Virus record (IMG/VR): IMGVR_UViG_3300044796_000662
Span: 298,938 to 362,937 of that record
Reading direction: 5' to 3' (one strand)
Length of the DNA stretch: 64,000 nt
Below, one piece after another: positions 4,181 to 57,600 of the stretch. Under the pieces are notes generated by a model, which was not told where the DNA came from, did not search any database, and saw only the letters and a program-made list of their open reading frames with translations. A program made the translations under genes and the position numbers. The first letter of the stretch is position 1. The number at the start of each line of letters is the position of its first letter.

Positions 4181-4188
4181 ATTGACTG

Positions 4189-34903: not shown

Positions 34904-36136
<1,233 letters not shown>

Positions 36137-36141
36137 GGGGG

Positions 36142-36351
36142 TCACTCCGAAACGGAGGGCAGCTTCTTGATCTCGCCCTTGGCGAGCTTCCACGCGCGCT
36201 GGACGACCCAAGAGAGCGAGCGATCGAGACGCTTGGCCTCCTCGGCGATCTCCTTGAGCATGTCCTCGGGGAAGTAGAGGGACTGCTTCCTCTTGTCCGT
36301 CTTCACGTTGTCGGCGGGCATCAACTTCTCCTGGTCTTCTTTGGTGCTCAT
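36142..36351 (-). CDS. small RHH-like protein of the Myxococcales MXAN_4361/4362 (TIGR04563-like) family
   Basis: DKRKQSLYFPEDML.EI..EA.RLDRSLSWVVQ.AW signature (recognised from memory); GGAG RBS. Confidence 0.8.
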   Translation of the reverse strand: MSTKEDQEKLMPADNVKTDKRKQSLYFPEDMLKEIAEEAKRLDRSLSWVVQRAWKLAKGEIKKLPSVSE

Positions 36352-36527
36352 GGTAAACTCCGAGCCGTAACAAGAATGACGTCCACCTAAGGACGTCCCC
36401 GACCAAGGTAGTTGGCCGGGTTCCCGATAAGCAGATCGCTACAGAGGATCCTCAAGAAGATCCTCACGCTACAGCTTCTTCGAGTGAGCCGGTTTTGTCT
36501 GCCCTGGTCCGTGTAAAGGACAGACAA

Positions 36528-38331: not shown

Positions 38332-40707
38332 ATGACGACGCCGAGTAGCCACAAGATCTCCAAGGACATGTATCTCGTGCGGCAGCCGATCAGCAAAGCC
38401 GCGCCCGCGGTGGCGAAGGCTGTCGAAGTCCCCACGGACCACATCTACGTCATCGACTGCTCCGGCAGCATGACCTACGACCTGCCGAAGGTCGCCAACC
38501 AGGTGAAGCGGAAGCTGCCGAAGTCGCTCAAGGAGAGCGACACGCTGACCGTCATCTGGTTCTCGGGTCGCGGGCAGTGCGGCGTGCTCCTCGAAGCCGA
38601 GCCGGTCGCCACGCTCAAGGACTTGAAGAAGGTCGAGGATGCGGTCGATCGCTGGATCCGCCCGATCGGGATGACGGGCTTCAAGGAGCCCCTCGTTCTC
38701 GCCAAGGAAGTGGCCGAGCGCCTGACCAAGGGCAACAAGGGTCGCGCGACCTCGCTCTACTTCATGAGCGACGGCTGCGACAACCAGTGGAGCCGTGGCG
38801 AGATCCTCAAGGTGATCGAGGACGTGGGCACGAAGGTCCAGTCGGTCACGATCGTGGAGTACGGCTACTACGCCGACCGTCCGCTGCTCACGTCGATGGC
38901 CGAGAAGGCGGGCGGTACGTTCATCTTCGCCGAGACCTTCGATCGGTACGAGCCGCTCATCGAGGCGGCGATCCACAAGAAGGTCACGACGGCCAAGCGC
39001 ATCGAGGTCGAGGTGAAGGGCGACCAGATCGGCGGCTTCGCGTATGCTCTCTCGGGCGGTGACCTCGTCACGTTCGGAATCGAGGGCGGCAAGATCGCTG
39101 TGCCGGAAGACCTGTCCGAGGTCTACTACCTCTCGCCCTCCGTGATCGGCAAGGGCGATGGCGACGTGGACTACAAGGACTCGGCGCAGGCCGCCGCGCT
39201 CTACGCTGCGGTCAGTCTCTTCGCGGTCCGCATGAAGCCCGACGTCGTCTACCCGCTGCTCAAGGTGCTCGGCGACGTGCAGTACATCGAGCAGTTCAGC
39301 GTGTGCTTCGGCAAGCAGAAGTACAGCGAGTTCATGGACGTCGCGAAGCAGGCGGCGTTCGAGCCGAAGCTGCGGCTCGTCAAGGGCTACGATCCGAAGC
39401 GCGTGCCCCGTGAGGACGCCTTCACCGTGCTCGACGTGCTGAACCTCCTCCAGCAAGACGACCTGGCGACCGTGCTGCTCGACGCTCCGGAGTTCAAGTA
39501 CAGCAAGATCGGCCGTGGGCGCGTCGATGCGTCCGACCAGCTCGACTCGGACGAGCAGGCCGAGATCGAGCGTCTGACCGCCGAGATGAAGGGCGTGAAG
39601 GACTCGAAGAAGATCAAGGAGCTGACCGACAAGATCGCCGAGCTGGCGAACAAGCCCGAGGCTCTCAAGCCCGTGCGCGTCAAGCAGCCGGGCGGCTACC
39701 CGATCCTCGATCTCACCTTCAACGAGGACCGTCCGAACGTCTCGATGAGGGTCAAGCACCAGGTCACCATCGATCTGACCAAGCGCCTCAAGACGGCCCC
39801 CAAGGGGACGGAGAAGGTGCCTGCGAACTTCGAGTGCTTCCAGTTCCGCAACTACGCGGTCATCAAGGATGGCCTCATCAACATCGAGACGCTGCCGGCG
39901 CGCATCTCGACGGGCACCTTCGAGAAGCTTCTCGCTGAAGGGGTCATCGACAAGAACGGGGTCAAGTCGATGGTTCACGGCACGTGGGATGTCCTGCTCG
40001 ACCTCCGCAAGCTGCCGGTCATCAACCGGCAGATGGTCAAGACCCTCAGCGCCAAGGACTTCTTCCAGCGCAGCTACGACCTGACGAAGGCTCAGGCCGC
40101 GCAGAAGGTCTTCAAGGACTACGCCAAGTCCCTGCTCCCTGCGAAGGAAAGCAAGGGCTACGTGGACCAGTACGGCGCGGATGCTGCCACCTGGCTCAAG
40201 GAGCAGGGCATCACGGACTACAACGGCTACCAGCCGCCCAAGACCACGCAGGCCCCGACGACGGACGTCTACGTTGGCAAGGAGCTGAAGGTCAGCCTCA
40301 AGGGGTTGTCGTCGCTCCCCAAGGTCGCCGACGTTCAGGCCAAGATCATGAAGAAGGCCGCTGACGGCACGGTCGAATGGCTGAAGAACCCCAAGCTCAA
40401 CGCCCCGGGCGCCCTCATGGCCGACGCCGTGAAGGAAGTCGAGACGTTCCTGGCCAGCCCTGCGTACACGAAGGCCAAGGACCAGGGAGAGACCCTGAAG
40501 AACTGGCTCGAAGTCCAGAAGAAGGCATCGATCGAGAAGGCCCGCCAGCTCATCTTCGAGGTCGCGCAGGCGACGTTCGTGACGGTCGTGGGCCAGGTCT
40601 GGTTCCAGGAGTTCGCGTCGATCGACGAGAACACCATGAACATCAAGGTCGATGGCAACGAGATCGAGTGCAAGGTCGAGATGAAGGAAGTCGAGATCCG
40701 CATCTGA
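38332..40707 (+). CDS. large vWA (MIDAS) domain protein
   Basis: VIDCSGSM, G.TGF.EPL and FMSDG motifs; 791 aa; GAGGA RBS. Confidence 0.88.
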   Translation: MTTPSSHKISKDMYLVRQPISKAAPAVAKAVEVPTDHIYVIDCSGSMTYDLPKVANQVKRKLPKSLKESDTLTVIWFSGRGQCGVLLEAEPVATLKDLKKVEDAVDRWIRPIGMTGFKEPLVLAKEVAERLTKGNKGRATSLYFMSDGCDNQWSRGEILKVIEDVGTKVQSVTIVEYGYYADRPLLTSMAEKAGGTFIFAETFDRYEPLIEAAIHKKVTTAKRIEVEVKGDQIGGFAYALSGGDLVTFGIEGGKIAVPEDLSEVYYLSPSVIGKGDGDVDYKDSAQAAALYAAVSLFAVRMKPDVVYPLLKVLGDVQYIEQFSVCFGKQKYSEFMDVAKQAAFEPKLRLVKGYDPKRVPREDAFTVLDVLNLLQQDDLATVLLDAPEFKYSKIGRGRVDASDQLDSDEQAEIERLTAEMKGVKDSKKIKELTDKIAELANKPEALKPVRVKQPGGYPILDLTFNEDRPNVSMRVKHQVTIDLTKRLKTAPKGTEKVPANFECFQFRNYAVIKDGLINIETLPARISTGTFEKLLAEGVIDKNGVKSMVHGTWDVLLDLRKLPVINRQMVKTLSAKDFFQRSYDLTKAQAAQKVFKDYAKSLLPAKESKGYVDQYGADAATWLKEQGITDYNGYQPPKTTQAPTTDVYVGKELKVSLKGLSSLPKVADVQAKIMKKAADGTVEWLKNPKLNAPGALMADAVKEVETFLASPAYTKAKDQGETLKNWLEVQKKASIEKARQLIFEVAQATFVTVVGQVWFQEFASIDENTMNIKVDGNEIECKVEMKEVEIRI

Positions 40708-40820
40708 CTCACTTCGTGGTCGGTCGGTACACCCGATCGGTGTAGTACCAGAGGGCGACGGGATGTTTTCCCGCCGCCCTCTTTCATGTAGAGGGACGAC
40801 TCCAAGAAAGGCAGGGCAGC

Positions 40821-41513
40821 GTGTCGGACAAGGGAAAGGGACTCTTCGGCGGCTTGAAGGGGATGTTCGTGGAGGAGACTCCCGAGCCCACGCACGCCGC
40901 ACAACCGGCTCCGGCCGCCGCTCCGCCGCCTCCTGCGCGGAACACCCCCGTGCCGGTTATGTCGTCGTTCTCGACGCTTCCCCGCACGCCTGCGGCGCCC
41001 CCTCCCGTCCAGGCGGATGAGGGCTCGCTCAAGTATCTGCGTGGTGAGCTGGCCAAGGCCATCTCGCCGGCCTACGCGGGCTTCATGGCGCAGTACGACG
41101 CTCTCGCGGAAGTCATCCCGGGCGAGGACATGCGCTTCAAGGCCGCCCTGAAGGCGAGCAAGACCACGGTGGCGGATCTCGCGAACGCCCTGGACGGTCT
41201 GACGGCCACGCTGACGGCCACGCACGACAAGTTCAGCGCCACCTACGAGGCGAGCAAGAAGAAGGCGATGGACGCCGCGAACGCGCAGGTCGAGGCCACG
41301 CAGCGCCTCATCGAGACCCGCACGCAACAGCTCGCTGCCATCCAGGCGGAGATCCAGTCCCTCCAGGGCAAGCTTCAGACGGACACGGAAGCTGCACAGA
41401 ACGAAGAGCGGCGCATCGAAGGGACCCGGGCGGGCTTCGAGGCGGCGTACGCACAAGTCGCCGGGGAACTCAACGCACAGAAGGCGCACGTCGGTGCGCA
41501 GCCGAGGAACTGA
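40821..41513 (+). CDS. coiled-coil protein with Pro-rich linker
   Basis: A/Q/E/K heptads in the C-terminal half. Confidence 0.8.
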   Translation: MSDKGKGLFGGLKGMFVEETPEPTHAAQPAPAAAPPPPARNTPVPVMSSFSTLPRTPAAPPPVQADEGSLKYLRGELAKAISPAYAGFMAQYDALAEVIPGEDMRFKAALKASKTTVADLANALDGLTATLTATHDKFSATYEASKKKAMDAANAQVEATQRLIETRTQQLAAIQAEIQSLQGKLQTDTEAAQNEERRIEGTRAGFEAAYAQVAGELNAQKAHVGAQPRN

Positions 41514-41516
41514 CCA

Positions 41517-42566
41517 ATGCCCGAGACATCGAAGCCCTGGACCTCACGTCCTGAGGGCAAGTTCGGAACCGCCGTGCTCTTCGCGGCGATCATCGCGGGC
41601 GGCGGAGCCCTGCTCTACTTCTGGGGTCTCATCCTGCCGTTCCTCATCGGCGTGGTGACCAACACCATCGAGCTGGCTGCGCTCTGCGGCGTTCTCGCCC
41701 TCATGGCTGTCGTGGTCTTCGACCCGCGGTGGAGGAACCTGGCCGTCTACGGGTACAAGTCGCTCATGCGTGCCATCACCGGCATGTTCATCGAGATCGA
41801 TCCCATCGGCATCCTCAAGACCTACGTCGTGAGCCTGCGCAAGCGCCTGGACGAGATGGACCAGTCGATCTCCAACCTCTCGGGCCAGATCCGCAAGCTC
41901 AAGGAGCAGATCAGCTCCAACGAGCAGAAGCGCGTGCACAGCCTGCAAGTCATGCAACAGGCCCAACAGCGCGTGAAGGACGATGCGACGGCCACGGGCA
42001 TGAAGAACGTCTTCACGCTCCAGGCTCGCCAGGCCGGGCGCCTGGAGAAGTCGAACCTGACCCTGCAAGGTCTCCTCGACAAGATGGAGGGGATGCTCAA
42101 GGTGCTCCGCAAGTACCGTGAGGCGTCTGCGCTCCTCATCGAGGACATCAACGGCGAAGTCGAGGTCAAGAGCGCCGAGCGCGCCGCGCTGCTCGCCGGG
42201 TACAACGCGTTCTCCAAGGCCAAGAAGATCATGGCCGGTGGTGGCGACGAGAAGGAACTCTTCGACATGACCATGGAGAAGCTGGCCGACGACTACGGCA
42301 TGAAGATGGGCGAGATCGAGAACTTCATGGACATGTCCAAGGGGTTCATCGACGGCGTGGACCTCGACAAGGGCGTCTTCGAGGCGCAGGGTCTCGCGCA
42401 GCTCGAAGCATGGGAGAAGAAGAGCGACAGTCTTCTCCTGCACGGCAGCAACGGCAACGGGAACAACGTCCGCATCGACGTCGCCCCGTCGTACGAAGCG
42501 GCTGCCCCTTTGGATGACGATGCTGCCCCCAACAGCATCTCGGAACTCTTCAACAAGCACAACTGA
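41517..42566 (+). CDS. membrane-anchored PspA/IM30-like coiled-coil protein
   Basis: Two N-terminal hydrophobic helices, DPIGIL motif and long coiled coil. Confidence 0.75.
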
Positions 42567-42589
42567 CAAGGACGAAGGACGACAACCCC

Positions 42590-44398
42590 ATGGCTACTCG
42601 ACTCAAGCCCCTCCCGAAGGTCCTCATCGGCCTCGCCGGATTCGGGCTCCTGTTCGGACTGTTCAAGTACCTCGTGAGCACGGGCGTCATCGCGATGCCC
42701 GGCCATGCTGCCGAGGTGCCCAAGGCCGCAGCCCTGCCGGACGCCCCGGCGGCCGCCGCAACGACGGCGAACGCTTCGGTTGCCGCTGTCCCCCTGCCCG
42801 GGTCCACGGCCGTCCACAAGGGCACGGACGTGCGCGTCAGCATGTGGGCGTGGAACGCGCAGATGGGCTTCATGTTCGCCAACGGCGGTCCGGACACCAC
42901 GGACGGCTCGCTCATGTCGCAGCACAACGTGAACGTCCACATCACCCGTGAGGACGACACGACCAAGATGCAGGGCATGCTCCTCGCGATGGCGAAGGCG
43001 TACCAGTCGAACCCCAACACGACCGAGGGCGTGCACTTCATCACCCTCATGGGCGACGGTACCGCCGCGTTCTTCGCCGGGATCAATCCGCTCCTCACGA
43101 AGATCTGCAAGGACTGCACGGCCGAAGTCGTCGGCGTGCTCGGCTACTCGCGCGGCGAGGACAAGCTCATGGGGCCGCCCGCCTGGAAGCAGAGCCCCAA
43201 GGCGGCCGTCACAGGCGACGGAGCCCTCATCGCGGGCGTGCTCCGCGATGGCGACTGGAACGTGGCCATGAAGTGGGCAGCGGACAACAACCTGCCCAAC
43301 AACCCGGACGAGACGACGTTCGACCCCGACGCGCTCAACTGGCTCAACGCCAATGACTACATCGAGGCGGGGACCAAGTACATCACGGGCACCTGCGAAG
43401 ATCGCCCCGTCGTCCACCAGGGCAAGCGCACCGGCCAGACGAAGCACGTCTGCGTCAACGGCGTCGTGACCTGGACCCCCGGTGACGTGAACGTCGCGCA
43501 GAAGAAGGGCGGGCTCGTCTCCATCGTCTCGACCAAGGAGTACCGCGCTCAGATGCCCTGCGCCCTCATCGGCATCCACAAGTGGGACGCCGCTCACCCG
43601 GACGCGGTCAAGGGCATGCTCCAGGCCGCGTTCGACGGCGCCGACCAGGTGCGCTCGTACCCGGCTGCTCTCTCGAAGGCGGCTGCGATCAGCGCTGCGG
43701 TCTACCACGGTTCGACCGAGGAGAACGCCGCCTACTGGGAGAAGTATTACAAGGGGGTCACGGAAGCTGACGCGACCGGCCTCCAGGTGCAGCTCGGCGG
43801 GTCGTCGGTCTCGAACCTCGCCGACGACATGCAGATCTTCGGGCTCGCTCCCGGCGCGGCCAACCTGTTCGACGCGACCTACAGCGTCTTCGGAGACATC
43901 GTCGTTCAACAGTACCCGAAGCTCGTACCGAACTACCCGCCGACGAGCGCCATCCTCGACACGTCCTACGTGAAGGCGCTGGCCGCCACTTCGACGGCCA
44001 CGACCACGGCGGACCTGCCCAAGTATGACCAGAACGAGGGCATCACGCAGCTCGTCTCCAAGAAGGCGTGGGCCATCAACTTCGACACGGGCAAGGCCAC
44101 CTTCACGCCCGATGCGAACACGGCGCTCAGCCAGATCACGAAGAACACGGAGATCACCGACCTGCTCATCGAGATCGACGGCTACACGGACAACACCGGG
44201 GACCCGGGGTTCAACAAGACCCTGTCGCAGCAGAGGGCTGACGCCGTGCGCCAGTACCTCATGAAGCAGTCCGCCTCGAACTTCCCGCCCACGCGCTTCA
44301 CCGTGCATGGGTACGGGCAGGACAAGCCGATCGCCAGCAACGAGACCGAGGCTGGCAAGGCGAAGAACCGGCGCGTCGAAATCCTCATGGGGAACTAG
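42590..44398 (+). CDS. ABC-type (NitT/TauT-like) substrate-binding domain fused to OmpA C-terminal domain
   Basis: N-terminal TM; periplasmic binding region; IDGYTDNTG…N.TLSQQRA.AV…GYG…P.ASN…NRRVEI OmpA motif. Confidence 0.88.
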
Positions 44399-45249
44399 TG
44401 GCCAACTCCATCCCCACCGCACCCGCGAGTCCGGCGGCGATTCAAAGTCGCCGGGCTTCGCCCCTCTGGGGCTTCCAGGAAGCCTGGAGGCCAAACGGGC
44501 ACCCGCCCGCCTCCGTGCAGCGGGGCATGGTCATCGTCACGGTTCTCCTCTTCCTCGGGGCTTGGGCCATGAACTCGGGAGGAGTCCTCCCGAGCCCCGG
44601 GGAGGTTCTCGACGCCTTCCCCGCCCTCTTCCAGCAAGGGCTCGTCTTCCAGCTCTACGTGAGCCTTGCGACGAACCTCCAGGCCATCGCCCTCTCGTGC
44701 CTGCTCACGGTTCCTCTCGCGTACCTGACCGTCCTGCCCGCGCTGCGCCCCCTCGTGCACGCGTTCTGCAAGGCACGGTTCCTCAGCCTCACCGGGTTCG
44801 TCATCCTCTTCACGATCACGTTCGGCGGCGGGCACGGCCTCAAGGTCGCGCTCCTTGTCTTCGGGATGAGCACCTTCCTCATCACGAGTCTCAACGAAGT
44901 CGTCGAGAGCATCCCCCGGGAGGAATTCGATCACGCCCGCACGCTCCGCATGGGACCGTGGGGCTCAGTTTGGGAGGTCGTCGTCATCGGCCGCTTCGAT
45001 GCCGTGCTCGACACCATCCGCCAGAACGCAGCCATGGGATTGCTCATGCTGACGATGGTGGAAGGGCTCGTGCGCTTCGAAGGCGGCCTCGGAGCGATGA
45101 TGCTCGCCGAGGACAAGCACCTCAAGCTCGCGGCCGTTGCCGCTGTCCAGCTCATCGTGCTCGGCATCGGCTTCTGTCAGGACTGGTTGATCCTGCTCTT
45201 GCGTCGTGTGATCTGCCCGTACGCCAGCCTGACCCTGGAGCGCCGATGA
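44398..45249 (+). CDS. ABC transporter permease (SsuC/TauC-like)
   Basis: LPSPGEV, multiple TM helices, EAA-like loop IPREEFDHARTL. Confidence 0.88.
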   Translation: MANSIPTAPASPAAIQSRRASPLWGFQEAWRPNGHPPASVQRGMVIVTVLLFLGAWAMNSGGVLPSPGEVLDAFPALFQQGLVFQLYVSLATNLQAIALSCLLTVPLAYLTVLPALRPLVHAFCKARFLSLTGFVILFTITFGGGHGLKVALLVFGMSTFLITSLNEVVESIPREEFDHARTLRMGPWGSVWEVVVIGRFDAVLDTIRQNAAMGLLMLTMVEGLVRFEGGLGAMMLAEDKHLKLAAVAAVQLIVLGIGFCQDWLILLLRRVICPYASLTLERR

Positions 45250-45542
45250 GTAGCAGCGCCAACTTCGTCTACCTGACCGGCTTCGCAGCCGTATGCATCG
45301 TGGGCATCATCGCCGCAGTCGCCGCCGCCGACGATCCAACGGCCGCAACCCACACCCTCGAAACGGAAGGGTGGTCCGACATCCACGTCTACGACTCGGG
45401 GGTTGCGACCGGCTTCGAGGGTTGCTCCGACGACGACGGGATCTACTACCGGGCCACCGGCAAGAACCCCGCGGGCAAGGAAGCGAAGGCCCTCGTGTGC
45501 TGCGGGGCCATTCTCAAGGCGTGCACGGTGAGGATCGAATGA
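45246..45542 (+). CDS. small exported/membrane protein with conserved Cys
   Basis: N-terminal TM; GCSDDD…ATGKNPAG…VCCG. Confidence 0.7.
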   Translation: MSSSANFVYLTGFAAVCIVGIIAAVAAADDPTAATHTLETEGWSDIHVYDSGVATGFEGCSDDDGIYYRATGKNPAGKEAKALVCCGAILKACTVRIE

Positions 45543-46363
45543 CAATGCAACCGTACGAGCTGCGCGACGTGCTGCTAAGCGTCCGCAACGTCTCGTTGTC
45601 CTACGACGGCAAGCCCGTGCTCACGAACGTCAACGCGGACGTGAGGGACATCGTGCGCCCCAACTGCGTGACGGGGCAGATCGTCGGCATCCTCGGTCCG
45701 AGCGGCGTCGGTAAGACGCAACTCTCGCGCATCATGGCGGGCCTCCAGGAACCGACCTCGGGGCAGGTGACGGTGACGTCCAAGGCCACCCCCGTCAGGG
45801 CGGGGCTCGTCGGGTACGTGCCGCAGAACTACCCACTGCTTCGCCACCGGACCGTGTCCGGCAACCTCATCGTCGCTGCCAAGATGGCCGGGGCGGATGA
45901 TGCGACCGCTCGCGCAAAGGCCCTCGACTACCTCCAGAAGTTCGAACTCGAAGACAAGTGGGACGTGTACCCGGCGCAGCTCTCGGGCGGCCAGCGGCAG
46001 CGCGTCGCCATCGCGCAACAGCTTCTCTGCTCCGAGCACTACCTGATCCTCGACGAGCCGACGACCGGCCTCGACCCGATCATGAAGGATGTCGTCTGCA
46101 ACTTCATCCGTCAGGTCGCGGCCCTCAACGAGGAGAACACCATCCTCGTCGTCACGCACGACATCCCCGCTGTGCTGACCATGGCCGACACGCTCTGGCT
46201 CGTCGGCCGTCAGCGCGACGCCGAGGGCAAGTCCATTGGCGCCAGCATCGCCCAGACCTACAACCTGATCGAGCGTGAGATCACCTGGGAACCGAACGTC
46301 GCCTCGACGGTGGCCTTCCAGGAACTCGCCCGCGAGATCCGAGCACGCTTCGAGACCCTATGA
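45539..46363 (+). CDS. ABC transporter ATP-binding protein
   Basis: GPSGVGKT, LSGGQRQR, ILDEP, VTHD motifs. Confidence 0.95.
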   Translation: MTMQPYELRDVLLSVRNVSLSYDGKPVLTNVNADVRDIVRPNCVTGQIVGILGPSGVGKTQLSRIMAGLQEPTSGQVTVTSKATPVRAGLVGYVPQNYPLLRHRTVSGNLIVAAKMAGADDATARAKALDYLQKFELEDKWDVYPAQLSGGQRQRVAIAQQLLCSEHYLILDEPTTGLDPIMKDVVCNFIRQVAALNEENTILVVTHDIPAVLTMADTLWLVGRQRDAEGKSIGASIAQTYNLIEREITWEPNVASTVAFQELAREIRARFETL

Positions 46364-47163
46364 ATCTTAAACTGAATCGGAGTGCAGTCCGTCTATACCT
46401 GCAACTCACTATCGCCCTCGCTCTCCTGCCATCGACCGCGTGGGCGTACCCCTCGGCTGTCGTCTTTTCCCCCAACGGCGAGGCGCACGTGCTCGGCAGC
46501 GTGGGCCTGCTCGCGTACACGTCTACGAACTTCTCCCCCGGCCACGTCACGCCAGGGGCCTCGTGGTTCGGGATCGAGACCGGCCTCCTGCCGCGTTGGG
46601 CGTACGGAGATTCCGGCGTGTCCTTCGGAGGTCTTGAGGTCGGCTTCGACGTCATCACCCCGTACGCCCTCGACACGGTCAAGCCCGTGTTCAACGCGAA
46701 GCTCGGCCTCGTGACCGAGGGCACCTACTCGCCGAGCGTGGCCGTGGGCGTCATGGAGGTCTCCCCGGCCTTCCCCGCGATGAACTTCCTGTTCGTCTCG
46801 GCCACGAAGACCCTCGGTCCCGCCGGCAGGCTGACGCTCGGGTTCGGGGACAACACCGGCTCCAGCTCCGTCTTCTACGGCAGCTTCCCGTTCACGACCG
46901 GGGCGAAGCAGGCGGTCATGGCCGCGTACGAGTCACCGCTCCTGTTCGACCGCATCGGCTTCGTCGCCGACTACTTCGGCGGTGTAAGCGAGGTGAGTGA
47001 CCTCTACACAGGCGTGACGCTGTCCCTCTCCGCCAACACCACCGTTGCCCTCGGAGCCTTCTTCGACAACGACCGCACCGCCGCTACGGGCAAGTACGAC
47101 GGGATGTTCGCGTACCTCACGAAGAACTTCGACGCTACCAAGCTCTTCGACAAGCAGCCATGA
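46360..47163 (+). CDS. exported protein, possibly an outer-membrane beta-barrel
   Basis: Signal peptide (…ALLPSTAWA); alternating beta-strand pattern with aromatic residues. Confidence 0.65.
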   Translation: MNLKLNRSAVRLYLQLTIALALLPSTAWAYPSAVVFSPNGEAHVLGSVGLLAYTSTNFSPGHVTPGASWFGIETGLLPRWAYGDSGVSFGGLEVGFDVITPYALDTVKPVFNAKLGLVTEGTYSPSVAVGVMEVSPAFPAMNFLFVSATKTLGPAGRLTLGFGDNTGSSSVFYGSFPFTTGAKQAVMAAYESPLLFDRIGFVADYFGGVSEVSDLYTGVTLSLSANTTVALGAFFDNDRTAATGKYDGMFAYLTKNFDATKLFDKQP

Positions 47164-47543
47164 CCAAGGACTCCTCCGACGAATCCGACGCCCCCGTGAT
47201 CCAGGCGGGAGTCGTCTACGTCGGAGAGGAGGAGTTCATCGGGGCGATGCCCGTCCGGACCGATCTGCCCATCGAGCCCCAAGACCCGAAGGACAGCATC
47301 GGCGCCAAGGAGTGGGCGCAGTACGGCAACTGCATCGTATACGTCCCCAATGGCGGTCCGCTCAACGCAGACTGGACCTTGGCCGAGGGCGGTACGGTGC
47401 TCATTCGCTCGACCAAAGGCGGATGGTGCATGACCGAGATGCGCAAGGACTCGAAGAGCTGGTTCGTCATCTGCGACAACAAGAGGGTGCCCATCGTCTG
47501 GAACAACGAGCGCGCCTGCTGGGTATCCACCGTAGAGGTCTGA
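47160..47543 (+). CDS. hypothetical protein
   Basis: ATGA overlap; 127 aa. Confidence 0.6.
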   Translation: MTKDSSDESDAPVIQAGVVYVGEEEFIGAMPVRTDLPIEPQDPKDSIGAKEWAQYGNCIVYVPNGGPLNADWTLAEGGTVLIRSTKGGWCMTEMRKDSKSWFVICDNKRVPIVWNNERACWVSTVEV

Positions 47544-47544: not shown

Positions 47545-48072
47545 ATGAACAAGATCGCCGTTTACGCAGGCTCGTTCGATCCCATCACAACCGGCCACGA
47601 GAACATCATTCACAGGGCGGTGCCGCTCTTCGACAAGTTCATCATCGCCATCGGTCGCAACGCTTCGAAGAAGGGCGTCCTCTTCGACATTCAAGAGAGG
47701 ATCGACCTGATCAAGCACGCGTGCGGCCCCCTCATTTCAGCGAGGGAGATCGAGGTCACGAGCTTCGACGGCCTGCTCGTGAACTTCTGCCGAGACCGGG
47801 GTGCCAACATCATCGTCCGCGGCCTTCGCGCCGCGATGGACTTCGAGTACGAGTTGACCATCGCCCTCGCGAACAAGACACAGGCCAGCGACATCGAGAC
47901 GGTCTTCCTGCCCGCCGAGCCGAACGTGAGCTTCGTCTCGTCGAGCATCATCAAGGAGATCGCCTCACACGGAGGGAACGTCCGTGCCTTCTGCTCCCCC
48001 TACGTCGAGCAGAAGCTCTGGGCCAAGTTCGGCTACGGGGGCAAGAGTGGGCAAGCCGAACCCACACGCTAA
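47545..48072 (+). CDS. coaD: phosphopantetheine adenylyltransferase
   Basis: YAGSFDPIT.GH, RGLRA..DFEYE, SFVSSS motifs. Confidence 0.95.
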   Translation: MNKIAVYAGSFDPITTGHENIIHRAVPLFDKFIIAIGRNASKKGVLFDIQERIDLIKHACGPLISAREIEVTSFDGLLVNFCRDRGANIIVRGLRAAMDFEYELTIALANKTQASDIETVFLPAEPNVSFVSSSIIKEIASHGGNVRAFCSPYVEQKLWAKFGYGGKSGQAEPTR

Positions 48073-48538: not shown

Positions 48539-48775
48539 TCACGGCTGACCCGAGGTGTGCCCGAAGTCGCACGCGGGGCACTTGCTGCTTGGACCTCGTT
48601 CGGTCCATTCGTGCCCCTGCGAACAGGAGTACCTGGAGTTCTTATGGTTTGGGTTGTGCACGTGCTCTTTACCTTCCTCGTCCCAGTAGTGCTGCATGGC
48701 CGCCGCTGTCGTGTACGACACACCCGGGTAGACCATGCTCTTGAGACCCGCGTCCTGACATTGCTTGCAGATCAT
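48539..48775 (-). CDS. small Zn-binding protein
   Basis: CKQC…CSQGHEW…CPAC. Confidence 0.6.
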   Translation of the reverse strand: MICKQCQDAGLKSMVYPGVSYTTAAAMQHYWDEEGKEHVHNPNHKNSRYSCSQGHEWTERGPSSKCPACDFGHTSGQP

Positions 48776-48812
48776 GCTCTGGATCTACACCGCACTGGTG
48801 TTAGGCACCGGA

Positions 48813-49295
48813 ATGGGAGTCGAGATCGAACGCCGGTTCTTGGTCAATCGCGCCTTGTTGCACGTAGAGAGCGCCGACTACACGGAGATCGTGCAAGGGT
48901 ACCTCACGAAGGACCCGTGGGTTCGCGTGCGAATCAAGACGCACGGGAACGTGCGGGCCGCCGAGCTGACCATCAAAGGCAAGGGCACTCTTGTCCGGTC
49001 GGAGTTCAACTACAAGATCCCGGTAGATGAGGCGGAAGGGCTACTCTGCCTCGTACGGTTCGGCGTCATCCACAAGAAGCGGTATCAGGCGCACCGCTGG
49101 GAGATCGACGAGTTCCTGGACGGAGACTTCAACGGCCTCTGGCTTGCTGAGATCGAGCTACACCGTGAAGACGAGCCGCTTCCCTCGACTCCAGATTGGC
49201 TAGGCCAAGAGGTCACAGATGACCCGCGGTACTCGAACGCGTACATGGCCGAGCACGGACCGCCCGGTGTAGAGGTTGCCCATGGGACCGAATGA
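48813..49295 (+). CDS. CYTH domain protein
   Basis: EIERRFLV, QGYL, VRVR, LTIKG, EFNY.IP, AEIEL, EVTDDPRYSN motifs. Confidence 0.93.
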   Translation: MGVEIERRFLVNRALLHVESADYTEIVQGYLTKDPWVRVRIKTHGNVRAAELTIKGKGTLVRSEFNYKIPVDEAEGLLCLVRFGVIHKKRYQAHRWEIDEFLDGDFNGLWLAEIELHREDEPLPSTPDWLGQEVTDDPRYSNAYMAEHGPPGVEVAHGTE

Positions 49296-49896
49296 CCAAC
49301 TCGCGCTTGTCGATCTAGACTCGACCATCGCCGACTATGACGCGGCCATGAAGGCAGCCATGCGGACGTTGCAAGCGCCAGAAGAGAAGAGCTATGCGGG
49401 TCGCTTCGAAGAGGGGGTGGAGCCGCCGTACCTCGAAGCTCGGCGCAAGCTGATCCAGAATCAGCCTGGCTTCTGGCGCAACCTGCACTTGCTGCCCACG
49501 GGGTTCGAGGTCGTGGACGAACTGCGCACGGTGGGCTTCCGTCTGCACGTGCTCACGAAGGGGCCGACCTCGACGCCGAGCGCGTGGACCGAGAAGGCCG
49601 AGTGGTGCCACAAGAACCTGCCCGACGCGCTGGTGACGGTCTCGGGAGACAAGTCCCTCGTGTACGGCCGCGTGCTCGTGGACGACTACCCGCCGTACTT
49701 CACGAAGTGGCTCGCGGTGCGCCCGAGAGGTCTCGTGGTCTGTGTGGCGCAGCTCTGGAACGCCGGCTACGCCCGAGGCGGGGTTCTGGAGCACCCGAAT
49801 GTCTTCCGGTACGACGGCACGAACCGGGCGGAGCTGCGGGCCGTTCTCCAGCGGGCTTTCGACAGAAGCCCTGGCGCGCCCCTCAACGCAGGGTGA
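49282..49896 (+). CDS. HAD-superfamily 5'(3')-nucleotidase-like protein
   Basis: DLDSTIAD motif I; K..W; LVDD motif IV. Confidence 0.85.
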   Translation: MGPNDQLALVDLDSTIADYDAAMKAAMRTLQAPEEKSYAGRFEEGVEPPYLEARRKLIQNQPGFWRNLHLLPTGFEVVDELRTVGFRLHVLTKGPTSTPSAWTEKAEWCHKNLPDALVTVSGDKSLVYGRVLVDDYPPYFTKWLAVRPRGLVVCVAQLWNAGYARGGVLEHPNVFRYDGTNRAELRAVLQRAFDRSPGAPLNAG

Positions 49897-51916: not shown

Positions 51917-52699
51917 ATGCAACCCAGGAAGATTCAGCGCTACGGCTGGAAGCCCGACCTCCCGGACCACCGGGACCACCTTTATGCCGCTCCGCCGGCC
52001 GTTCTCGTGTCCCTTCCCGAGTCCGTGGATCTGCGCCCGCACTGCCCCGCGGTCTACGACCAGGGACAGCTCGGCTCGTGCACCGCGAACGCGATCGGTG
52101 CGGCCTTCGAGTTCGACCAGATCAAGGAGAAGGTCGCGCACGTGTGGCGCCCGAGCCGTCTCTTCATCTACTACAACGAGCGCGTCATGGAGGGCGACGT
52201 CTCCCAAGACGCCGGCGCTCAGATCCGTGACGGCATCAAGAGCGTCGCGACGCAGGGCGCGTGCTCTGAGGATCTCTGGACCTACGACATCACGAAGTTC
52301 GCAGACCAGCCGCCGCAGAACTGCTACGCGAACGCTGCCAAGCACCTCGCGACGAGCTACCAGAGCGTCGCGCAGTCGCTCTCGCAGATCCAGGGCTGCC
52401 TCGCAAGCGGTTACCCGGTTGTCTTCGGCTTCACCGTCTACGACAGCTTCGAGAGCGCGCAGGTCGCCTCAACGGGCGTCCTGAACATGCCCGCATCGAG
52501 CGAGTCGGTCCTCGGCGGCCATGCAGTCCTCTGCGTGGGCTACGACAACGCTTCGCAGCGCTTCATCGTTCGCAACTCGTGGGGCGACGCTTGGGGCCAG
52601 AAGGGCTACTTCACGATGCCGTACACGTACCTGCTCGACTCGAACCTCGCGAGCGACCTCTGGACGATTCGGTTCGTACAGAGCACTCCGACCTCCTGA
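51917..52699 (+). CDS. papain-like cysteine peptidase (C1A family)
   Basis: QGQLGSCTANA, GGHAV and NSWG..WG..GY motifs. Confidence 0.93.
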   Translation: MQPRKIQRYGWKPDLPDHRDHLYAAPPAVLVSLPESVDLRPHCPAVYDQGQLGSCTANAIGAAFEFDQIKEKVAHVWRPSRLFIYYNERVMEGDVSQDAGAQIRDGIKSVATQGACSEDLWTYDITKFADQPPQNCYANAAKHLATSYQSVAQSLSQIQGCLASGYPVVFGFTVYDSFESAQVASTGVLNMPASSESVLGGHAVLCVGYDNASQRFIVRNSWGDAWGQKGYFTMPYTYLLDSNLASDLWTIRFVQSTPTS

Positions 52700-54350: not shown

Positions 54351-54686
54351 TTACCGCCTGATCTTGCCGTGGATGACCAGGTGGTAGATCAACTCTTCCA
54401 CGGCCTGCTTGCGCGAGCCATACCGGAGACGAGCCGAGTTGAGCCCTGGGGCCTCGTAGCGCCAGCGCGGGCTGCGCATCTCGCGCTCTCCGTACCGGAG
54501 CCGCCCCGCCTTGCGGAACGTCACCTCGGTCGTGCGCTCGACCGTTCCGATGACCCTTCCCCGAAGCTGGACGCGGTAGCTCTTGAACTCGGGGTGCGCG
54601 GTGTTCCAGTGCGGTTGCTCTTCGAGCGTGGCGAGGTCCACGAGCTTGGCCACCAGCTCACGCTGCCGAAGTTCGCGATCGGTCAC
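54351..54686 (-). CDS. hypothetical protein
   Basis: 111 aa; overlaps the helicase stop. Confidence 0.6.
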   Translation of the reverse strand: MTDRELRQRELVAKLVDLATLEEQPHWNTAHPEFKSYRVQLRGRVIGTVERTTEVTFRKAGRLRYGEREMRSPRWRYEAPGLNSARLRYGSRKQAVEELIYHLVIHGKIRR

Positions 54687-57600
54687 GTCCCGACCTTCGC
54701 GGTGGGCGACGCCTTACGGCGCCGAGAGTCCAAAGGGACGACTTCGCCCATGCCGCCGATCATCGACCAGAGCTGCTTGCCGATCGACAGACCCGCAAGG
54801 TACTCGTCCTCTCCGAGCCCCGCCGCCTGGAGCGCGGACTCGGGGTCAAGGCCGTCCGTCGAGACCGAGACGGCAACCTTCTTCATGAGAAGGTCGTAGA
54901 GCGCCACCTGGAGAGTGCCCTTGTAGACCGGGACGTGGATCTCCGTGTCCCGAGTCTGCCCGATGCGATCAACGCGGCCGATGGCCTGACGGAACGTGAT
55001 CGCGTTGCAGCCAGGATTCTCCATCCAGATCTCGGCCGAGAAATGCACCAGGTTGTTCAAGCCGGTCTGAATCGCGACAGGGTTCGTGACCAGGATGCGG
55101 CGCCCCTTCTTGAGGATCTCGCGGTTGATCCAGTCCTGGCGCTTGCCCGTCGCAACCTTGTCCGCGTAGAGGATCGGCGCTTTCTCGCCCGTGCGCTTCT
55201 CGATGAGCCGCGCGAGCCGAGGCAGAAGCGCGACGTGCCAGGAGAAGACCATCACATTGCGGCCCTGCTCCAGCTTGCGCTCGATGAGATCGAGCATCCA
55301 CTCTTCCTTCGGAAGAAGCGTGTCCGAAGAGAACCCAGGCTGGCTGACGATGAGCTTACCCTCATCGACCGTCTCGGGGTAACGGATCTCGAAGTCGCCC
55401 GACTCGACGTTGCCCACGTCCGACGTCGCCCGGTCCAGGTAGCTCGGCAGCTCGGCAAGCTGGCCGAAGAGCTTTCCGGCCTTGCCATCGGTCGAGAACT
55501 GGTCAGCGCGGATCTGCGTGACGAGCTTGGTCTTGAGCGCCTCGAAGCGCGACAGAAGCTCGCGGCTCGGCTCAACCTCATGGCGATGCTGCGTGCATGC
55601 CGGGAGATCGATCGCGAGGTCAGCCTTGTGCAGCGTGACCGCGATCGGGAGCAGATGGCGCAGAAGGAAGAGCGGCAGCACCCCGGGGGCGCTCCCGATG
55701 ATGCGCTCCGAGCGGATCGTGACCCGGTCCGAATTCGAACCGAACTCCACGACCTTGCCCTCCAGATCCTTTTCCTGGACGGCGCGCTTCCGGTAGCCGT
55801 AGCGATCCACGAAGCGCTGGCGCTCCTCCCGACCGAACTCGGACCGGAAGTCGGCCGAGAGCGCCCACATGTTCATGAACAGCGACTCGGCGTAGCCGTT
55901 CATGATCGTGCCAGTCATCAGGATCGTCGGGAGGCCAAGGGTCGTCAGACGATGAGCCGAACGCTCCTGCGCGGACCCGTCCGTCGCGTACTCGTGCCCC
56001 TCGTCCAGGATCAGGAAATCGAAGAGATCGCGGTGGTAGCGGACGATGTGCTTCGCAAGCGCGACACGACGCGGCTCGGGGGACGCCCCGAACAGCTCCT
56101 CGCCGCACTCACGCGACCATCCGAACTGGCCGACGTGAGCCAGCGTCTCCAGCGCACGAACCGCCGCGTGAAGGCTGTAGCGCCCGTAGCCGTTCACGGT
56201 CACCACACCGCGATCGGTCCACTGGTACTTGATGTCAGAATCGTAGATCTTGACTTCCTTGAGGGCACGAAGATCGCCCTGCTCCCGCTGGAACGTCGAG
56301 AACGTGTAGTCGTACCCGCCCCGAGAAGGGTTGGCGGTGTTGAACGTCTCGACGGCCGCCTCGCCGTCCGGCCCGAGCAGGTGAAGGATCTGGCGAGAGA
56401 AGCTCTCCATGTGGCCCGTGAAAAGCTTCGACGCCACCTCCACGATCTTCGCATCGGAGCCCGCCGCGAGCAGTGAGAACACGATCGCCCGCTGGACGGC
56501 CGCCGAGAGCCCGAGTTCATCGTCCGACTTCAAGACACGGTCGGTGATGTTGTCGATTACGCGGTCGAGAGTGCCGAGCCCGAGACCCTTGAAGGTCCGC
56601 TTGACCCCAGACTCCGCGTAGTGCTTGGCGCGACGCGCATCGAAGCGGCCGTGCAGGATAGAACCCACGGTGCCCGAGGGCTCGAACGGCAGGAGCTTGA
56701 CGGCCAGCTCACGCGCCTCACGAGCCACCAGATCCTTGGCGATCAGCCGACGATGGGAGCAGCGGACGCGCTTCTTCGCGAGGGTATCCGCCTCGCCGAG
56801 CGTAGGAGCCCCGCACTTGGGGCACGAGCCCGCGGCGCCCTCCCACGAGTGCGAGAGCTTGGCAGCCTCGCGCGACATGATGCAGATCACGGTCCGGTCG
56901 CCCTTGATCTTCGCGACCCGCTCCAGATCTTCCACGTCAGCCAGGACATGAACCTCTGCGTCGGGAACGACAGCCGAGATCTGTTCCTTCCAGCCTTCGA
57001 GAAGATGCGGCGGGCACATGATGAGCGGACGATGAGCGCCGACCGTCCGCGCCGCCATGAGAGACACCGTGGACTTGCCCGAACCGATCTCGCCAAGCAG
57101 GATCGCGCTGCGGCCGCGACGGACCCTCTTGGGGGCGTTCGCACCGCCGAAGATCTTCACGAGCGCCTTGGTAACGTGGGTCTGCGCCGTGAAGAGCTTG
57201 CGGGGCGACGAGGCGAGAGTGATCGAGTCCCCGTCGCGGCGCGGATCGTAGAGCACCGGGCACTGGCGCTTCATTACGTCCATGAGGCTGTCGCCGTAGT
57301 GCGCCAGGAGATCCGCGACGTTCATCGAGGCAACGTCCTTCGAGCCCGTTGCTTCCGTGCCCGACGATAGCACGTGGTACTTGTGGGTCTCCAGATCCAG
57401 GACCGTGACGACGAGCTTGGGCTGCTGAACCTGAATGACGGTAGTGATCTCGCCGTCCTTGTTCTGCTTCTCCTCGATTGTCTTGTACTCCCGGTCGAAG
57501 ACGCCCTTGACGAGCAGCGCAGGGAGCACACCTTCGTCCGCGTCGATGCGAGCACCGTTGAACAGACCAGACGCGATACCGGCCGCGATGTGCGCAGGGC

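What the first reader, a model, noticed from the sequence alone, without database searches (positions are those of the whole stretch)
38332..47163. Phage-encoded envelope operon: vWA, coiled-coil, PspA-like, OmpA-fused ABC binding protein, permease, ATPase and putative barrel
Seen in sequence: eight tightly coupled co-oriented genes forming a complete NitT/TauT-type ABC system whose binding domain is tethered to a peptidoglycan-binding OmpA domain, together with a membrane PspA-like protein and a large MIDAS vWA protein. Established knowledge: comparable vWA/PspA/OmpA-ABC neighbourhoods are known from bacterial Ter-associated stress-response clusters; complete ABC importers are rare in phages. 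Inference: an envelope-spanning complex for superinfection exclusion, membrane stabilisation during a long infection, or nutrient/nucleotide import.
Basis: partly seen in the sequence, partly recalled or inferred. Interest (0 to 1): 0.62.

Follow-up and report, generated by a model that had tools for sequence, protein, structure and literature searches.

The report
Huge-phage PspA-linked ABC transporter cassette
A very large phage carries an intact, conserved five-gene set, made of a membrane-repair-type protein (PspA-like), its partner, and a complete small-solute uptake pump whose binding protein is pinned to the cell wall; bacteria have the same set and recent papers have already noted it, so it is real and interesting but not new.

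Summary
Window 38332-47163 has eight co-oriented intact genes: a MIDAS vWA protein, a coiled-coil protein, a 2-TM PspA/Vipp1-like protein, a TauA/SsuA/NrtA-fold binding protein fused to an OmpA-like peptidoglycan-binding domain, a permease, a 98-aa membrane protein, an ABC ATPase and a signal-peptide beta-barrel candidate.

Only five genes form a conserved unit: coiled-coil, TM-PspA, SBP-OmpA, permease and ATPase.
- TM-PspA, SBP-OmpA, permease and ATPase recur together in 24 of 25 viral loci found through the PspA-like gene (GC 31-65%).
- They also recur in the curated 462-kb phage LR756500.1.
- The vWA gene is a separate, widespread phage gene (phrog_2426, Ackermannviridae-type), set off by a terminator-like hairpin.
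- The barrel is found only in the closest relative.

Chromosomes of Acidobacteriota, Armatimonadota and Myxococcota carry the counterpart [g2-like][canonical PspA][SBP-OmpA][permease][ATPase], plus a TM-helical protein and an AAA+ ATPase that the phage record lacks.

Phage and bacterial copies separate on trees, and dN/dS is 0.12-0.27, so this is not a decaying recent capture.

Ravi et al. 2024 described the bacterial operon. An October 2026 preprint reports complete ABC transporters next to huge-phage pspA genes.

The likely role is inner-membrane maintenance coupled to solute uptake during infection. Substrate and function are untested.

The parts
38332..40707 (+). g1: 791-aa MIDAS vWA protein. 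It is a neighbour, not part of the conserved core.
   Evidence: DxSxS is visible at residues 42-46. phrog_2426 matches at E 8e-181 over the full length. It is 34% identical over 96% of its length to the conserved Ackermannviridae vWA protein and is found in 507 phage records; there it sits beside NAMPT and ACP genes with no ABC genes. It is adjacent to the cassette only in L004 and L088.
40750..40782 (+). GC-rich hairpin followed by UUUCAU. It is a terminator-like element between g1 and g2.
   Evidence: RNA fold of 40705-40825 gives a 13-bp stem; z-score -2.3 against shuffles. The consensus terminator scan did not list it because the T-tract is short.
40821..41513 (+). g2: 230-aa cytoplasmic partner protein, made of an N-terminal amphipathic/acidic motif (KGLFGGLKGMFVEE), a Pro/Ala-rich linker and a C-terminal coiled-coil domain.
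   Evidence: The GTG start and the motif are conserved in L088. An ORF of the same build lies directly upstream of the g3 homologue in all 22 further viral loci examined. The N-terminal motif matches the bacterial operon's first gene by hhalign at 94%, E 1e-7, over 19 columns. There is no known Pfam family, only generic coiled-coil hits. The public gene call of 184 aa is probably truncated.
41517..42566 (+). g3: 349-aa inner-membrane-anchored PspA/Vipp1 (ESCRT-III superfamily)-like protein.
42590..44398 (+). g4: 602-aa protein with an N-terminal TM helix or signal anchor, a NitT/TauT-class substrate-binding domain (about residues 75-470) and an OmpA-like peptidoglycan-binding domain (495-600).
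44398..45249 (+). g5: 283-aa ABC permease with about 6 TM helices.
   Evidence: BPD_transp_1 scores 18.7 bits, below the cut-off. NCBIfam SaoP-type permease matches at E 2e-10. An EAA-like loop 'DHARTLRMGPWG' is seen in the sequence. It is conserved next to g4 and g6 in phage and bacterial loci.
45246..45542 (+). gx: 98-aa small membrane protein with an N-terminal TM helix and a Cys-containing C-terminal part. It is lineage-specific.
   Evidence: ATGA overlaps with the g5 stop and the g6 start, and GC3 is 0.85 like its neighbours. It is called as a 98-aa gene in a second contig of the same phage. No homologue was found in the other loci. L088 and several other phages have different inserts at this permease/ATPase junction.
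45539..46363 (+). g6: 274-aa ABC ATPase.
   Evidence: PF00005 scores 95.9 bits. Walker A GPSGVGKT, signature LSGGQ and Walker B LILDEP are present, and they are intact in 21 of 22 phage copies. The start is fixed by alignment to L088. The closest NCBIfam models are sulfate, taurine and PhnT-type importer ATPases.
46360..47163 (+). g7: 267-aa secreted protein, a probable outer-membrane beta-barrel. It is an accessory gene of this lineage only.
   Evidence: Signal-peptide-like N-terminus ending in AWA. The ESM Atlas model (pTM 0.75) matches 'outer membrane channel' and Phenol_MetA_deg-like transporter clusters at TM 0.64-0.73. It is 87% identical in L088 only. No relative was found in viral contigs, GenBank phages or five module-carrying bacterial genomes.
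47160..47543 (+). g8: 127-aa protein of unknown function, translationally coupled to g7.
   Evidence: ATGA overlap with the g7 stop. It is 59% identical in L088 only. No family hits.

Best explanation
The functional unit is a five-gene cassette, g2-g6, carried by a huge phage of diderm soil or freshwater bacteria. The host is probably in Acidobacteriota, Armatimonadota or Myxococcota.

The cassette is the phage version of a bacterial 'PspA-coupled ABC transporter' operon. Its parts are:
- a PspA/Vipp1-type (ESCRT-III superfamily) membrane-remodelling protein, held at the inner membrane by two N-terminal TM helices;
- a conserved cytoplasmic coiled-coil partner with a short N-terminal amphipathic motif;
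- a type-I ABC importer of the NitT/TauT kind, whose TauA/SsuA/NrtA-fold binding protein carries an OmpA-like domain, so it sits on the peptidoglycan layer above the permease.

Shown:
- the domain identities;
- intact catalytic and peptidoglycan-binding motifs;
- strict co-occurrence of the genes in many divergent phages and in bacteria;
- purifying selection;
- separation of phage copies from bacterial copies.

Inferred:
- During the long infection cycle the phage makes this module to keep the host inner membrane sealed and energised (PspA function) while importing a small solute.
- The two activities are physically or functionally coupled.
- The substrate is unknown.

The vWA gene upstream, and the small membrane protein, barrel and g8 within and downstream, are lineage-specific neighbours, not core parts.
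For: Domain identities:
- g3: PspA/Vipp1 fold, family-level Pfam hits and hhalign.
- g6: PF00005 and intact motifs.

Co-conservation:
- g2-g6 are syntenic in L004, L005 and L006, and g4-g6 plus alignable upstream genes in the curated huge phage LR756500.1.
- 24 of 25 viral loci found through g3 also carry homologues of at least two of g4, g5 and g6, across GC 31-65%.
- A g2-type ORF lies upstream of g3 in all of them.

Bacterial counterpart:
- The operon has canonical PspA (PF04012, 56.7 bits) and sits in bacterial flanks.
- It is described in Ravi et al. 2024 (PMC11237479).

Not a recent capture:
- 78 bacterial copies form one clade (SH-aLRT 96), and the window lies in a 7-member viral clade (99).
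- The ATPase tree agrees.
- dN/dS is 0.12-0.27 against the 90%-identical relative.

Phage identity of the record:
- baseplate wedge, DNA polymerase and helicase PHROGs;
- 12 tRNAs;
- relatives on 200-620 kb viral contigs.

An independent preprint reports complete ABC transporters beside 15 huge-phage pspA genes and proposes membrane-stress mitigation.
Against:
- The phage record lacks the AAA+ ATPase and the TM-helical protein that accompany PspA in the bacterial operon. The remodelling cycle may therefore differ or depend on host factors; the record is only about 76% complete.
- The permease hits are below curated cut-offs.
- Import direction and substrate are inferred from the family only.
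- The g2-g3 complex prediction gave no verdict.
Confidence: 0.55

Rival explanations
1. The cassette is a plain auxiliary metabolic gene set: an ABC importer that feeds the infected cell a limiting nutrient such as a sulfonate, taurine, nitrate, bicarbonate or a related small solute. The PspA-like protein only helps insert or tolerate the extra membrane proteins.
For: The binding-domain fold is closest to TauA, SsuA, CmpA and NrtA. The ATPase is closest to sulfate, taurine and phosphonate importer ATPases. Phage-borne nutrient transport components are a known category (established knowledge).
Against: PspA (or the TM-PspA) and the g2-type gene are linked to the transporter in both bacteria and phages over large evolutionary distances, which argues for a joint function. 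The binding protein is tethered to peptidoglycan, which is unusual for a simple scavenging importer. No assimilation genes such as sulfonate monooxygenase or nitrate reductase are nearby in the phage or bacterial loci examined.
Confidence: 0.2
2. The cassette is a counter-defence or superinfection-exclusion device. It seals or remodels the inner membrane against membrane-depolarising abortive-infection effectors or against DNA injection by competing phages. The ABC part then acts as an energiser or sensor rather than a nutrient pump.
For: PspA-family proteins counter membrane leakage (established knowledge; Ravi et al. 2024). The module is kept under purifying selection in many huge phages. 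The phage form is a distinct TM-anchored variant that was not found in 80 bacterial loci or in 301 sampled genomes of the phylum of the Acidobacteria MAG holding L016.
Against: There is no direct evidence. The same transporter-PspA set is chromosomal and apparently vertically inherited in bacteria, in ordinary housekeeping surroundings. That points to a general envelope function, not a phage-specific weapon.
Confidence: 0.1
3. One reading: all eight genes, from the vWA protein to the outer-membrane barrel, build one envelope-spanning complex.
For: The genes are co-oriented, and g2 to g8 are tightly packed. Their predicted locations cover cytoplasm, inner membrane, peptidoglycan and outer membrane. 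The preprint notes vWA proteins near other huge-phage pspA genes.
Against: The vWA gene is separated by a terminator-like hairpin. It belongs to a family present in more than 500 phages that lack the cassette, and it is adjacent only in L004 and L088. The barrel, gx and g8 are confined to this phage and its closest relative.
Confidence: 0.08
4. The region is a recently captured, decaying fragment of host DNA, or host DNA flanking a provirus.
For: IMG/VR labels the record 'provirus'. Bacterial homologues at 50-62% identity exist.
Against: All genes are intact with catalytic motifs, and dN/dS is 0.12-0.27. The nearest sequences are from viral contigs, and bacterial copies form a separate clade. 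The neighbours are phage-type: a tRNA array, phrog_2426, and synteny with 406-kb and 218-kb viral contigs.
Confidence: 0.02

Closest known systems
Bacterial PspA/Snf7 - AAA+ - ABC ATPase - permease - (PBPb+OmpA) operons (Ravi et al. 2024, mSystems 9:e00847-23; PMC11237479)
   Same: [quoted passage not shown] I recovered this operon in 80 bacterial loci at 50-62% identity to g4, in the same gene order, with a g2-like first gene.
   Different: The phage form has its PspA-like protein fused to two TM helices and strongly diverged from canonical PspA. It lacks the AAA+ ATPase and the roughly 300-350-aa TM-helical protein found in the bacterial loci. Its copies form separate clades.
Huge-phage pspA loci with adjacent complete ABC transporters (Yuan & Chen, bioRxiv 10.64898/2026.10.24.761521, Oct 2026)
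   Same: This is the same phenomenon: pspA in phages over 200 kb from soil and freshwater, with 15 loci next to a binding protein, an ATPase and a permease. The authors propose a role in membrane-stress mitigation.
   Different: The preprint text I read does not describe the OmpA fusion, the TM anchoring of PspA, the g2-type partner, the bacterial counterpart or the phylogeny. I could not check whether this phage is among their 15.
TauABC / SsuABC / NrtABCD / CmpABCD (NitT/TauT-type ABC importers)
   Different: Sequence identity to the solved binding proteins is only 9-13%, with no sequence-level match to the binding domain in PDB or Pfam. The binding protein carries a TM helix and an OmpA domain. 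The substrate is unknown.
PspA / Vipp1 (IM30), bacterial ESCRT-III
   Same: It shares the long alpha1-alpha2/3 hairpin and following helices, the 'DP' motif at the start of helix 1, and weak but specific profile matches.
   Different: It has an N-terminal 2-TM anchor ahead of the segment that aligns with the N-terminal helix of Vipp1/PspA. It is below the Pfam threshold, and polymer formation is untested.
Ackermannviridae vWA-containing protein (phrog_2426), for g1 only
   Same: g1 matches over the full length at 34% identity with a MIDAS vWA N-terminus.
   Different: In Ackermannviridae it sits beside NAMPT and acyl-carrier-protein genes, not beside a PspA-ABC cassette. Its function is unknown in both settings.

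Membership tests
ABC transporter ATPase (PF00005) | Pfam model above the gathering score, with Walker A, the LSGGQ signature and Walker B with the catalytic Glu | tested here: met
   95.9 bits against a cut-off of 25. GPSGVGKT, LSGGQ and LILDEP are present.
Type-I ABC importer permease (BPD_transp_1) | Pfam or NCBIfam model above the cut-off, with an EAA coupling loop | tested here: inconclusive
   PF00528 scores 18.7 bits, below the cut-off of 26.4. NCBIfam SaoP matches at E 2e-10 but far below its cut-off. An EAA-like 'DHARTLRMGPWG' loop and about 6 hydrophobic segments are seen by eye.
NitT/TauT-class substrate-binding protein (TauA/SsuA/NrtA/CmpA fold) | Two-lobe periplasmic binding fold closest to this class | tested here: met
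NitT/TauT-class substrate-binding protein (TauA/SsuA/NrtA/CmpA fold) | Known ligand-binding residues or a defined substrate | not tested
   No residue-level superposition or docking was possible. There is no sequence-level match of the domain to PDB or Pfam.
OmpA-like peptidoglycan-binding domain (PF00691) | Pfam model above the cut-off, with the conserved Asp and Arg of the TDxxG...NxxLSxxRA motif that contact diaminopimelate | tested here: met
PspA/IM30 (PF04012), ESCRT-III superfamily | Pfam model above the gathering score for this protein | tested here: not met
   g3 has no PF04012 hit at E<=0.01 or <=1. A whole-record scan with PF04012 at E<=10 does not touch g2 or g3.
PspA/IM30 (PF04012), ESCRT-III superfamily | Remote homology at family level, with the helical-hairpin fold | tested here: met
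PspA/IM30 (PF04012), ESCRT-III superfamily | Membrane binding and polymerisation into rings or rods | not testable with these tools
   This needs biochemistry or cryo-EM.
Bacterial PspA-AAA+-ABC-(PBPb-OmpA) operon (Ravi et al. 2024) | PspA-superfamily gene adjacent to an ABC ATPase, a permease and a binding-protein-OmpA fusion | tested here: met
   The gene order g3-g4-g5-g6 is conserved. The bacterial counterpart was recovered.
Bacterial PspA-AAA+-ABC-(PBPb-OmpA) operon (Ravi et al. 2024) | Associated AAA+ ATPase (two-domain, Vps4-like role) | tested here: not met
   blastp with the 572-aa AAA+ protein of L016 finds nothing in the 363-kb record. None lies in the phage loci next to the cassette. 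The record is about 76% complete, so absence from the whole phage is not proven.
vWA domain with MIDAS (g1) | DxSxS...T...D metal-ion site, with a vWA profile | tested here: inconclusive
   D42-x-S44-x-S46 and the downstream T and D are seen by eye. Pfam VWA_2 and VWA score 18.3 and 16.6 bits, below their cut-offs. There is a strong match to phrog_2426, whose members are often annotated as vWA.
Outer-membrane beta-barrel (g7) | Signal peptide, a closed barrel fold, and a C-terminal aromatic beta-signal | tested here: inconclusive
   The N-terminus looks like a signal peptide. The Atlas model (pTM 0.75) aligns at TM 0.64-0.73 with outer-membrane channel and Phenol_MetA_deg-like clusters. The protein ends in ...KLFDKQP rather than an aromatic residue. 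It has no Pfam, NCBIfam or PDB sequence hit. I did not fold it myself.

The most novel reading that the evidence does not exclude
Huge phages carry their own streamlined ESCRT-III/PspA machine: membrane-anchored, apparently free of an AAA+ partner, and working with a phage-specific partner (g2). It is physically coupled to a peptidoglycan-tethered ABC transporter. Its job would be to defeat membrane-depolarising host defences, to control the timing of envelope failure, or even to build internal membrane structures. That would make it a new class of phage infection-maintenance or counter-defence system, not a borrowed nutrient pump.
Probability: 0.15. Interest if true: 0.7.

Novelty: new member of a known kind. 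Interest (0 to 1): 0.4.

Why it matters
The cassette is a widespread module that huge phages keep under selection (more than 120 protein clusters; contigs of 200-620 kb). It touches the cytoplasmic face, the inner membrane and the cell wall of the host.

If its role in membrane maintenance or solute uptake were shown, it would explain part of how phages with very long, resource-heavy infections keep the host cell alive and energised.

It would also give a handle on the uncharacterised bacterial PspA-ABC operon, which is present in cultivable groups such as Fimbriimonas, Chthonomonas and Bryobacter.

As a discovery it is limited. The bacterial operon was described in 2024 and the phage association in an October 2026 preprint. 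What this analysis adds:
- the exact five-gene core;
- the TM-anchored PspA variant;
- the conserved g2 partner and its shared N-terminal motif;
- the exclusion of the vWA and barrel genes from the unit;
- the phylogenetic separation from bacterial copies.

Tried and rejected
Searches that found nothing:
- Megablast of the region against GenBank phages: no match.
- tblastn of the 1224-aa neighbour: uninformative.
- PDB sequence-profile searches for g2 and g3: only generic coiled-coil hits.
- PF04012 against the whole record, and an HMM of canonical operon PspA against all ORFs of the record: no hit on g2 or g3.
- HMMs of the bacterial TM-helical protein (A6) and g2-like protein (A7), and blastp with the bacterial AAA+ protein: no hit in the record.
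- hhalign of the g3 family against the bacterial A6 protein: no relation, 0.8%.
- g7 relatives: none in viral contigs, GenBank phages, PDB sequences or five module-carrying bacterial genomes.
- The word search with g2 found only 4 close relatives, because the protein evolves fast and public gene calls are truncated.
- Terminase Pfam models: only a weak Walker-A hit, in what PHROGs call a helicase. Phage identity therefore rests on the baseplate, polymerase and helicase PHROGs, the tRNAs and synteny.
- AAA_5 scan for a MoxR/CobS-type partner of the vWA protein: one borderline hit about 250 kb away, not followed up.

Tools that gave no usable result:
- Complex prediction for g3 (residues 70-310) with g2: no verdict, score 0.00. 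This is evidence neither for nor against binding.
- The look-up of encoding contigs for a protein near the window's end: not on record, so the 'provirus' boundary was not examined.
- Searches were input slips and returned errors.

Considered and rejected:
- The ORF from the ATG at 45293 as the ATPase start.
- The 411-aa ORF at 44307-45542 as a gene; only its last 98 codons (gx) look real.

Full report
**Where the window lies**

The window is the last 64 kb of a 362,937-bp IMG/VR virus record (62.6% GC), labelled 'provirus' and estimated 76% complete. The record is a huge tailed phage.
- It encodes a gp6-type baseplate wedge protein, a phage DNA polymerase and a phage helicase.
- The window opens with 12 tRNA genes.
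- The region of interest is syntenic with viral contigs of 218 kb, 406 kb and 436 kb.
- One protein of the locus is also on record on a 570-kb contig.

**What is in 38332-47163**

There are eight co-oriented intact genes with GC3 of 0.85-0.92.

- **g1 (38332-40707).** A 791-aa protein with a visible MIDAS DxSxS motif. Pfam vWA scores fall below threshold, but it matches phrog_2426 over the full length at E 8e-181.
- **g2 (40821-41513, GTG start).** It has a short N-terminal amphipathic/acidic motif, a Pro/Ala-rich linker and a coiled-coil C-terminal part.
- **g3 (41517-42566).** It has a 58-residue hydrophobic N-terminus, read as two TM helices, followed by long helices.
- **g4 (42590-44398).** It has an N-terminal TM helix and a low-confidence linker, then a two-lobe binding domain, then an OmpA-like domain.
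- **g5 (44398-45249).** A permease.
- **gx (45246-45542).** A 98-aa TM protein whose start and stop both overlap its neighbours by ATGA. The JGI gene caller also called it on a second contig of the same phage.
- **g6.** An ABC ATPase whose real start is 45539. The upstream ATG at 45293 would add an Arg-rich extension that relatives lack.
- **g7 (46360-47163).** It has a signal-peptide-like N-terminus. Its ESM Atlas model resembles outer-membrane channels at TM 0.64-0.73.

From g2 to g8, neighbouring genes overlap by 1-4 nt or are at most 23 nt apart. Between g1 and g2 there are 113 nt holding a 13-bp GC-rich hairpin followed by UUUCAU.

**Domain identities**

*The binding protein, g4.* I folded g4 with a 22-sequence alignment (pLDDT 82.8).
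- The peptidoglycan-contact motif, including D534 and R549, is invariant in the family.

*The PspA-like protein, g3.* g3 does not reach the PspA Pfam model itself. The case for a diverged PspA/IM30 relative rests on four results:
- 6 of 33 family members hit the Pfam model, best E 5e-6.
- The AF2 model has the long helical hairpin, and the 12 best Foldseek hits are all Vipp1 chains (best 7o3w, E 6e-4); PspA 7abk ranks 14.
- A profile-profile comparison with the canonical PspA of the bacterial operon gives 81.7% probability and E 1e-5 over 169 columns.
- That alignment starts at the invariant 'DPIGIL', which corresponds to PspA's 'AEDP'.

*The partner, g2.* g2 has no known family.

**What is conserved together**

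*The core cassette.*
- The order g2-g3-g4-g5-g6 is kept in L004, L005 and L006.
- In the curated 462-kb huge phage LR756500.1, g4-g6 match by BLAST and the two upstream genes are alignable.
- Searching viral contigs with the g3 family gave 25 loci spanning GC 31-65%. Of these, 24 also carry homologues of at least two of g4, g5 and g6 directly downstream.
- In all 22 further loci examined, the ORF directly upstream of g3 has the g2 build: motif, Pro/Ala linker, coiled coil.
- The g4 family alone has more than 120 protein clusters at 55% identity or more, many on contigs of 200-620 kb.

*The other genes.*
- g1 is adjacent only in L004 and in the 90%-identical relative L088. Its family occurs in 507 deposited phage genomes, mostly Ackermannviridae, beside NAMPT and ACP genes and without any ABC genes.
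- g7 and g8 are found only in L088.
- gx is found nowhere else, not even in L088. Other phages have other inserts at the permease/ATPase junction.

The unit is therefore five genes, not eight.

**The bacterial counterpart**

A scan of species-representative genomes with the binding domain found 381 relatives. The best 80 are almost all MAGs of Acidobacteriota, Armatimonadota and Myxococcota, including chromosomes of 1.7-3.5 Mb.
- All 80 have the same binding-protein-OmpA fusion, aligned over residues 69-601 at 49-62% identity, and most carry the permease and ATPase alongside.
- None has a g3-type gene.
- Instead, 34 loci have a canonical 243-aa PspA (PF04012, 56.7 bits, above the cut-off), and 35 have a g2-like first gene.
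- 56 loci have a TM-helical protein of about 300-350 aa, typically after the ATPase. In the two Acidobacteriota loci where I looked (L016, L018) a roughly 575-aa gene follows, and the L016 one is an AAA+ ATPase.
- Flanking genes are ordinary bacterial genes: a TonB-type outer-membrane protein, MGDG synthase, SDR and GFO oxidoreductases, and YhbY.
- The N-terminal motif of g2 matches the bacterial first gene: hhalign 94%, E 1e-7, over only 19 columns.

This operon is the one Ravi et al. [quoted passage not shown] They suggest a link between membrane remodelling and solute transport.

The 363-kb phage record has no AAA+ homologue, no A6 or A7 homologue and no canonical PspA.

In 301 genomes sampled from the phylum of the Acidobacteria MAG that holds L016, the binding protein was found in 5 and the g3 family in none.

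**Captured fragment or old phage module?**

- On a tree of 96 g4 homologues, the 78 bacterial sequences form one side of a branch (SH-aLRT 96) and follow bacterial taxonomy. The 18 viral sequences lie outside it.
- The window sits in a 7-member viral clade (support 99). Its nearest bacterial sequence is more than twice as far away as other phages.
- The ATPase tree gives the same split.
- Against L088, dN/dS is 0.12-0.27 for g1-g7.
- ATPase motifs are intact in 21 of 22 phage copies.

The root, and hence the direction of transfer, is not determined, and only the 80 best bacterial hits were sampled.

**How it most likely works**

*Shown.*
- The predicted topology puts the PspA-like domain, g2 and the ATPase in the cytoplasm; the g3 anchor, the permease and gx in the inner membrane; and the binding domain plus the OmpA domain in the periplasm on the peptidoglycan.
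- The host must therefore be diderm.

*Inferred.*
- The phage expresses a membrane-maintenance device of the PspA type together with a binding-protein-dependent importer.
- The persistent linkage of the two in bacteria and phages suggests they act together, for example by keeping the membrane sealed and energised around an active transporter, or during envelope stress late in a long infection.
- The substrate is unknown. The conserved loops of the binding domain are rich in Trp, Tyr, Asp and Glu, which makes a simple anion less obvious than the fold relatives suggest. This is only a reading of the alignment.

A complex prediction for g2 with g3 gave no verdict, and no expression data could be obtained.

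**Novelty**

Ravi et al. 2024 published the bacterial operon. A preprint of 24 October 2026 (Yuan & Chen) reports 189 pspA genes in huge phages, 15 of them next to complete ABC transporters, and proposes membrane-stress mitigation. This locus is thus a new member of a known kind.

What appears to be added here:
- the exact five-gene core;
- the TM-anchored and strongly diverged PspA form in phages;
- the conserved g2 partner;
- the absence of the AAA+ and A6 components;
- the exclusion of vWA and barrel from the unit;
- the phage/bacterium split on the trees.

Noticed in passing
window 72-4399 (- strand): There is an array of 12 tRNA genes in 4.3 kb: Pro, Phe x2, Glu x2, Thr, Asn x2, Gln, Lys x2 and Tyr. 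This is typical of very large phages.
   Followed up: no
window 47545-48072, 48765-49295, 49276-49896: Directly downstream of the cassette lie three genes: a cytidylyltransferase-like protein whose N-terminus looks like phosphopantetheine adenylyltransferase (CoaD), a CYTH-domain protein and an NT5C 5'-nucleotidase. The same trio follows the cassette in L088, and NT5C alone follows it in L004.
   Followed up: partly
window 45246-45542; L088:11812-12180 and L088:13022-13873: The junctions on either side of the permease gene are insertion hot spots. This phage has a 98-aa TM/Cys protein at the permease/ATPase junction. Its 90%-identical relative instead has a 122-aa lipoprotein-like gene at the g4/permease junction and a 283-aa AAA_23-like gene at the permease/ATPase junction. 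Several distant phages have 0.7-1.5 kb between the permease and the ATPase.
   Followed up: partly
window 40821-40958: Public gene calls start g2 at Met47, giving 184 aa. This cuts off the conserved N-terminal motif, which is encoded from a GTG start.
   Followed up: yes
window 54683-58567 (- strand): A 1294-aa protein combines a DUF6094 methyltransferase-like region with weak DEAD/SNF2 helicase signals. It may be a DNA-modification or anti-restriction type protein.
   Followed up: no
window 25477-29151 and 34904-36406 (-), 51917-52699: Three other genes stand out: a 1224-aa beta-propeller/lactonase-like protein, a UDP-glucose/GDP-mannose dehydrogenase, and a papain-family (C1) cysteine protease. 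The protease is also present in L088.
   Followed up: no
bacterial loci, e.g. L016:6334-13823, L018:6313-13882, L084:7650-12979: The bacterial operon has two uncharacterised conserved members with no Pfam family. One is a g2-like first gene of about 226-286 aa with the N-terminal motif ...L(V/F)VE(L/x)PP. The other is a TM-helical protein of about 300-350 aa after the ATPase. The gene order differs between Thermoanaerobaculia (permease-ATPase-A6-SBP) and Bryobacterales/Armatimonadota (SBP-permease-ATPase-A6).
   Followed up: partly
whole record G000 and a 569,965-bp contig: IMG/VR labels the 363-kb record 'provirus', while an identical protein is on record on a 570-kb contig. Either about 200 kb was trimmed as 'host' or the phage is larger than the record. 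The boundary at the window's right end was not examined.
   Followed up: no
G000:C1:120000-200000: An 80-kb stretch holds only minus-strand genes with a mean length of about 600 aa, including ORFs of 2033 and 2773 aa and the baseplate wedge homologue. It is probably the structural module.
   Followed up: no
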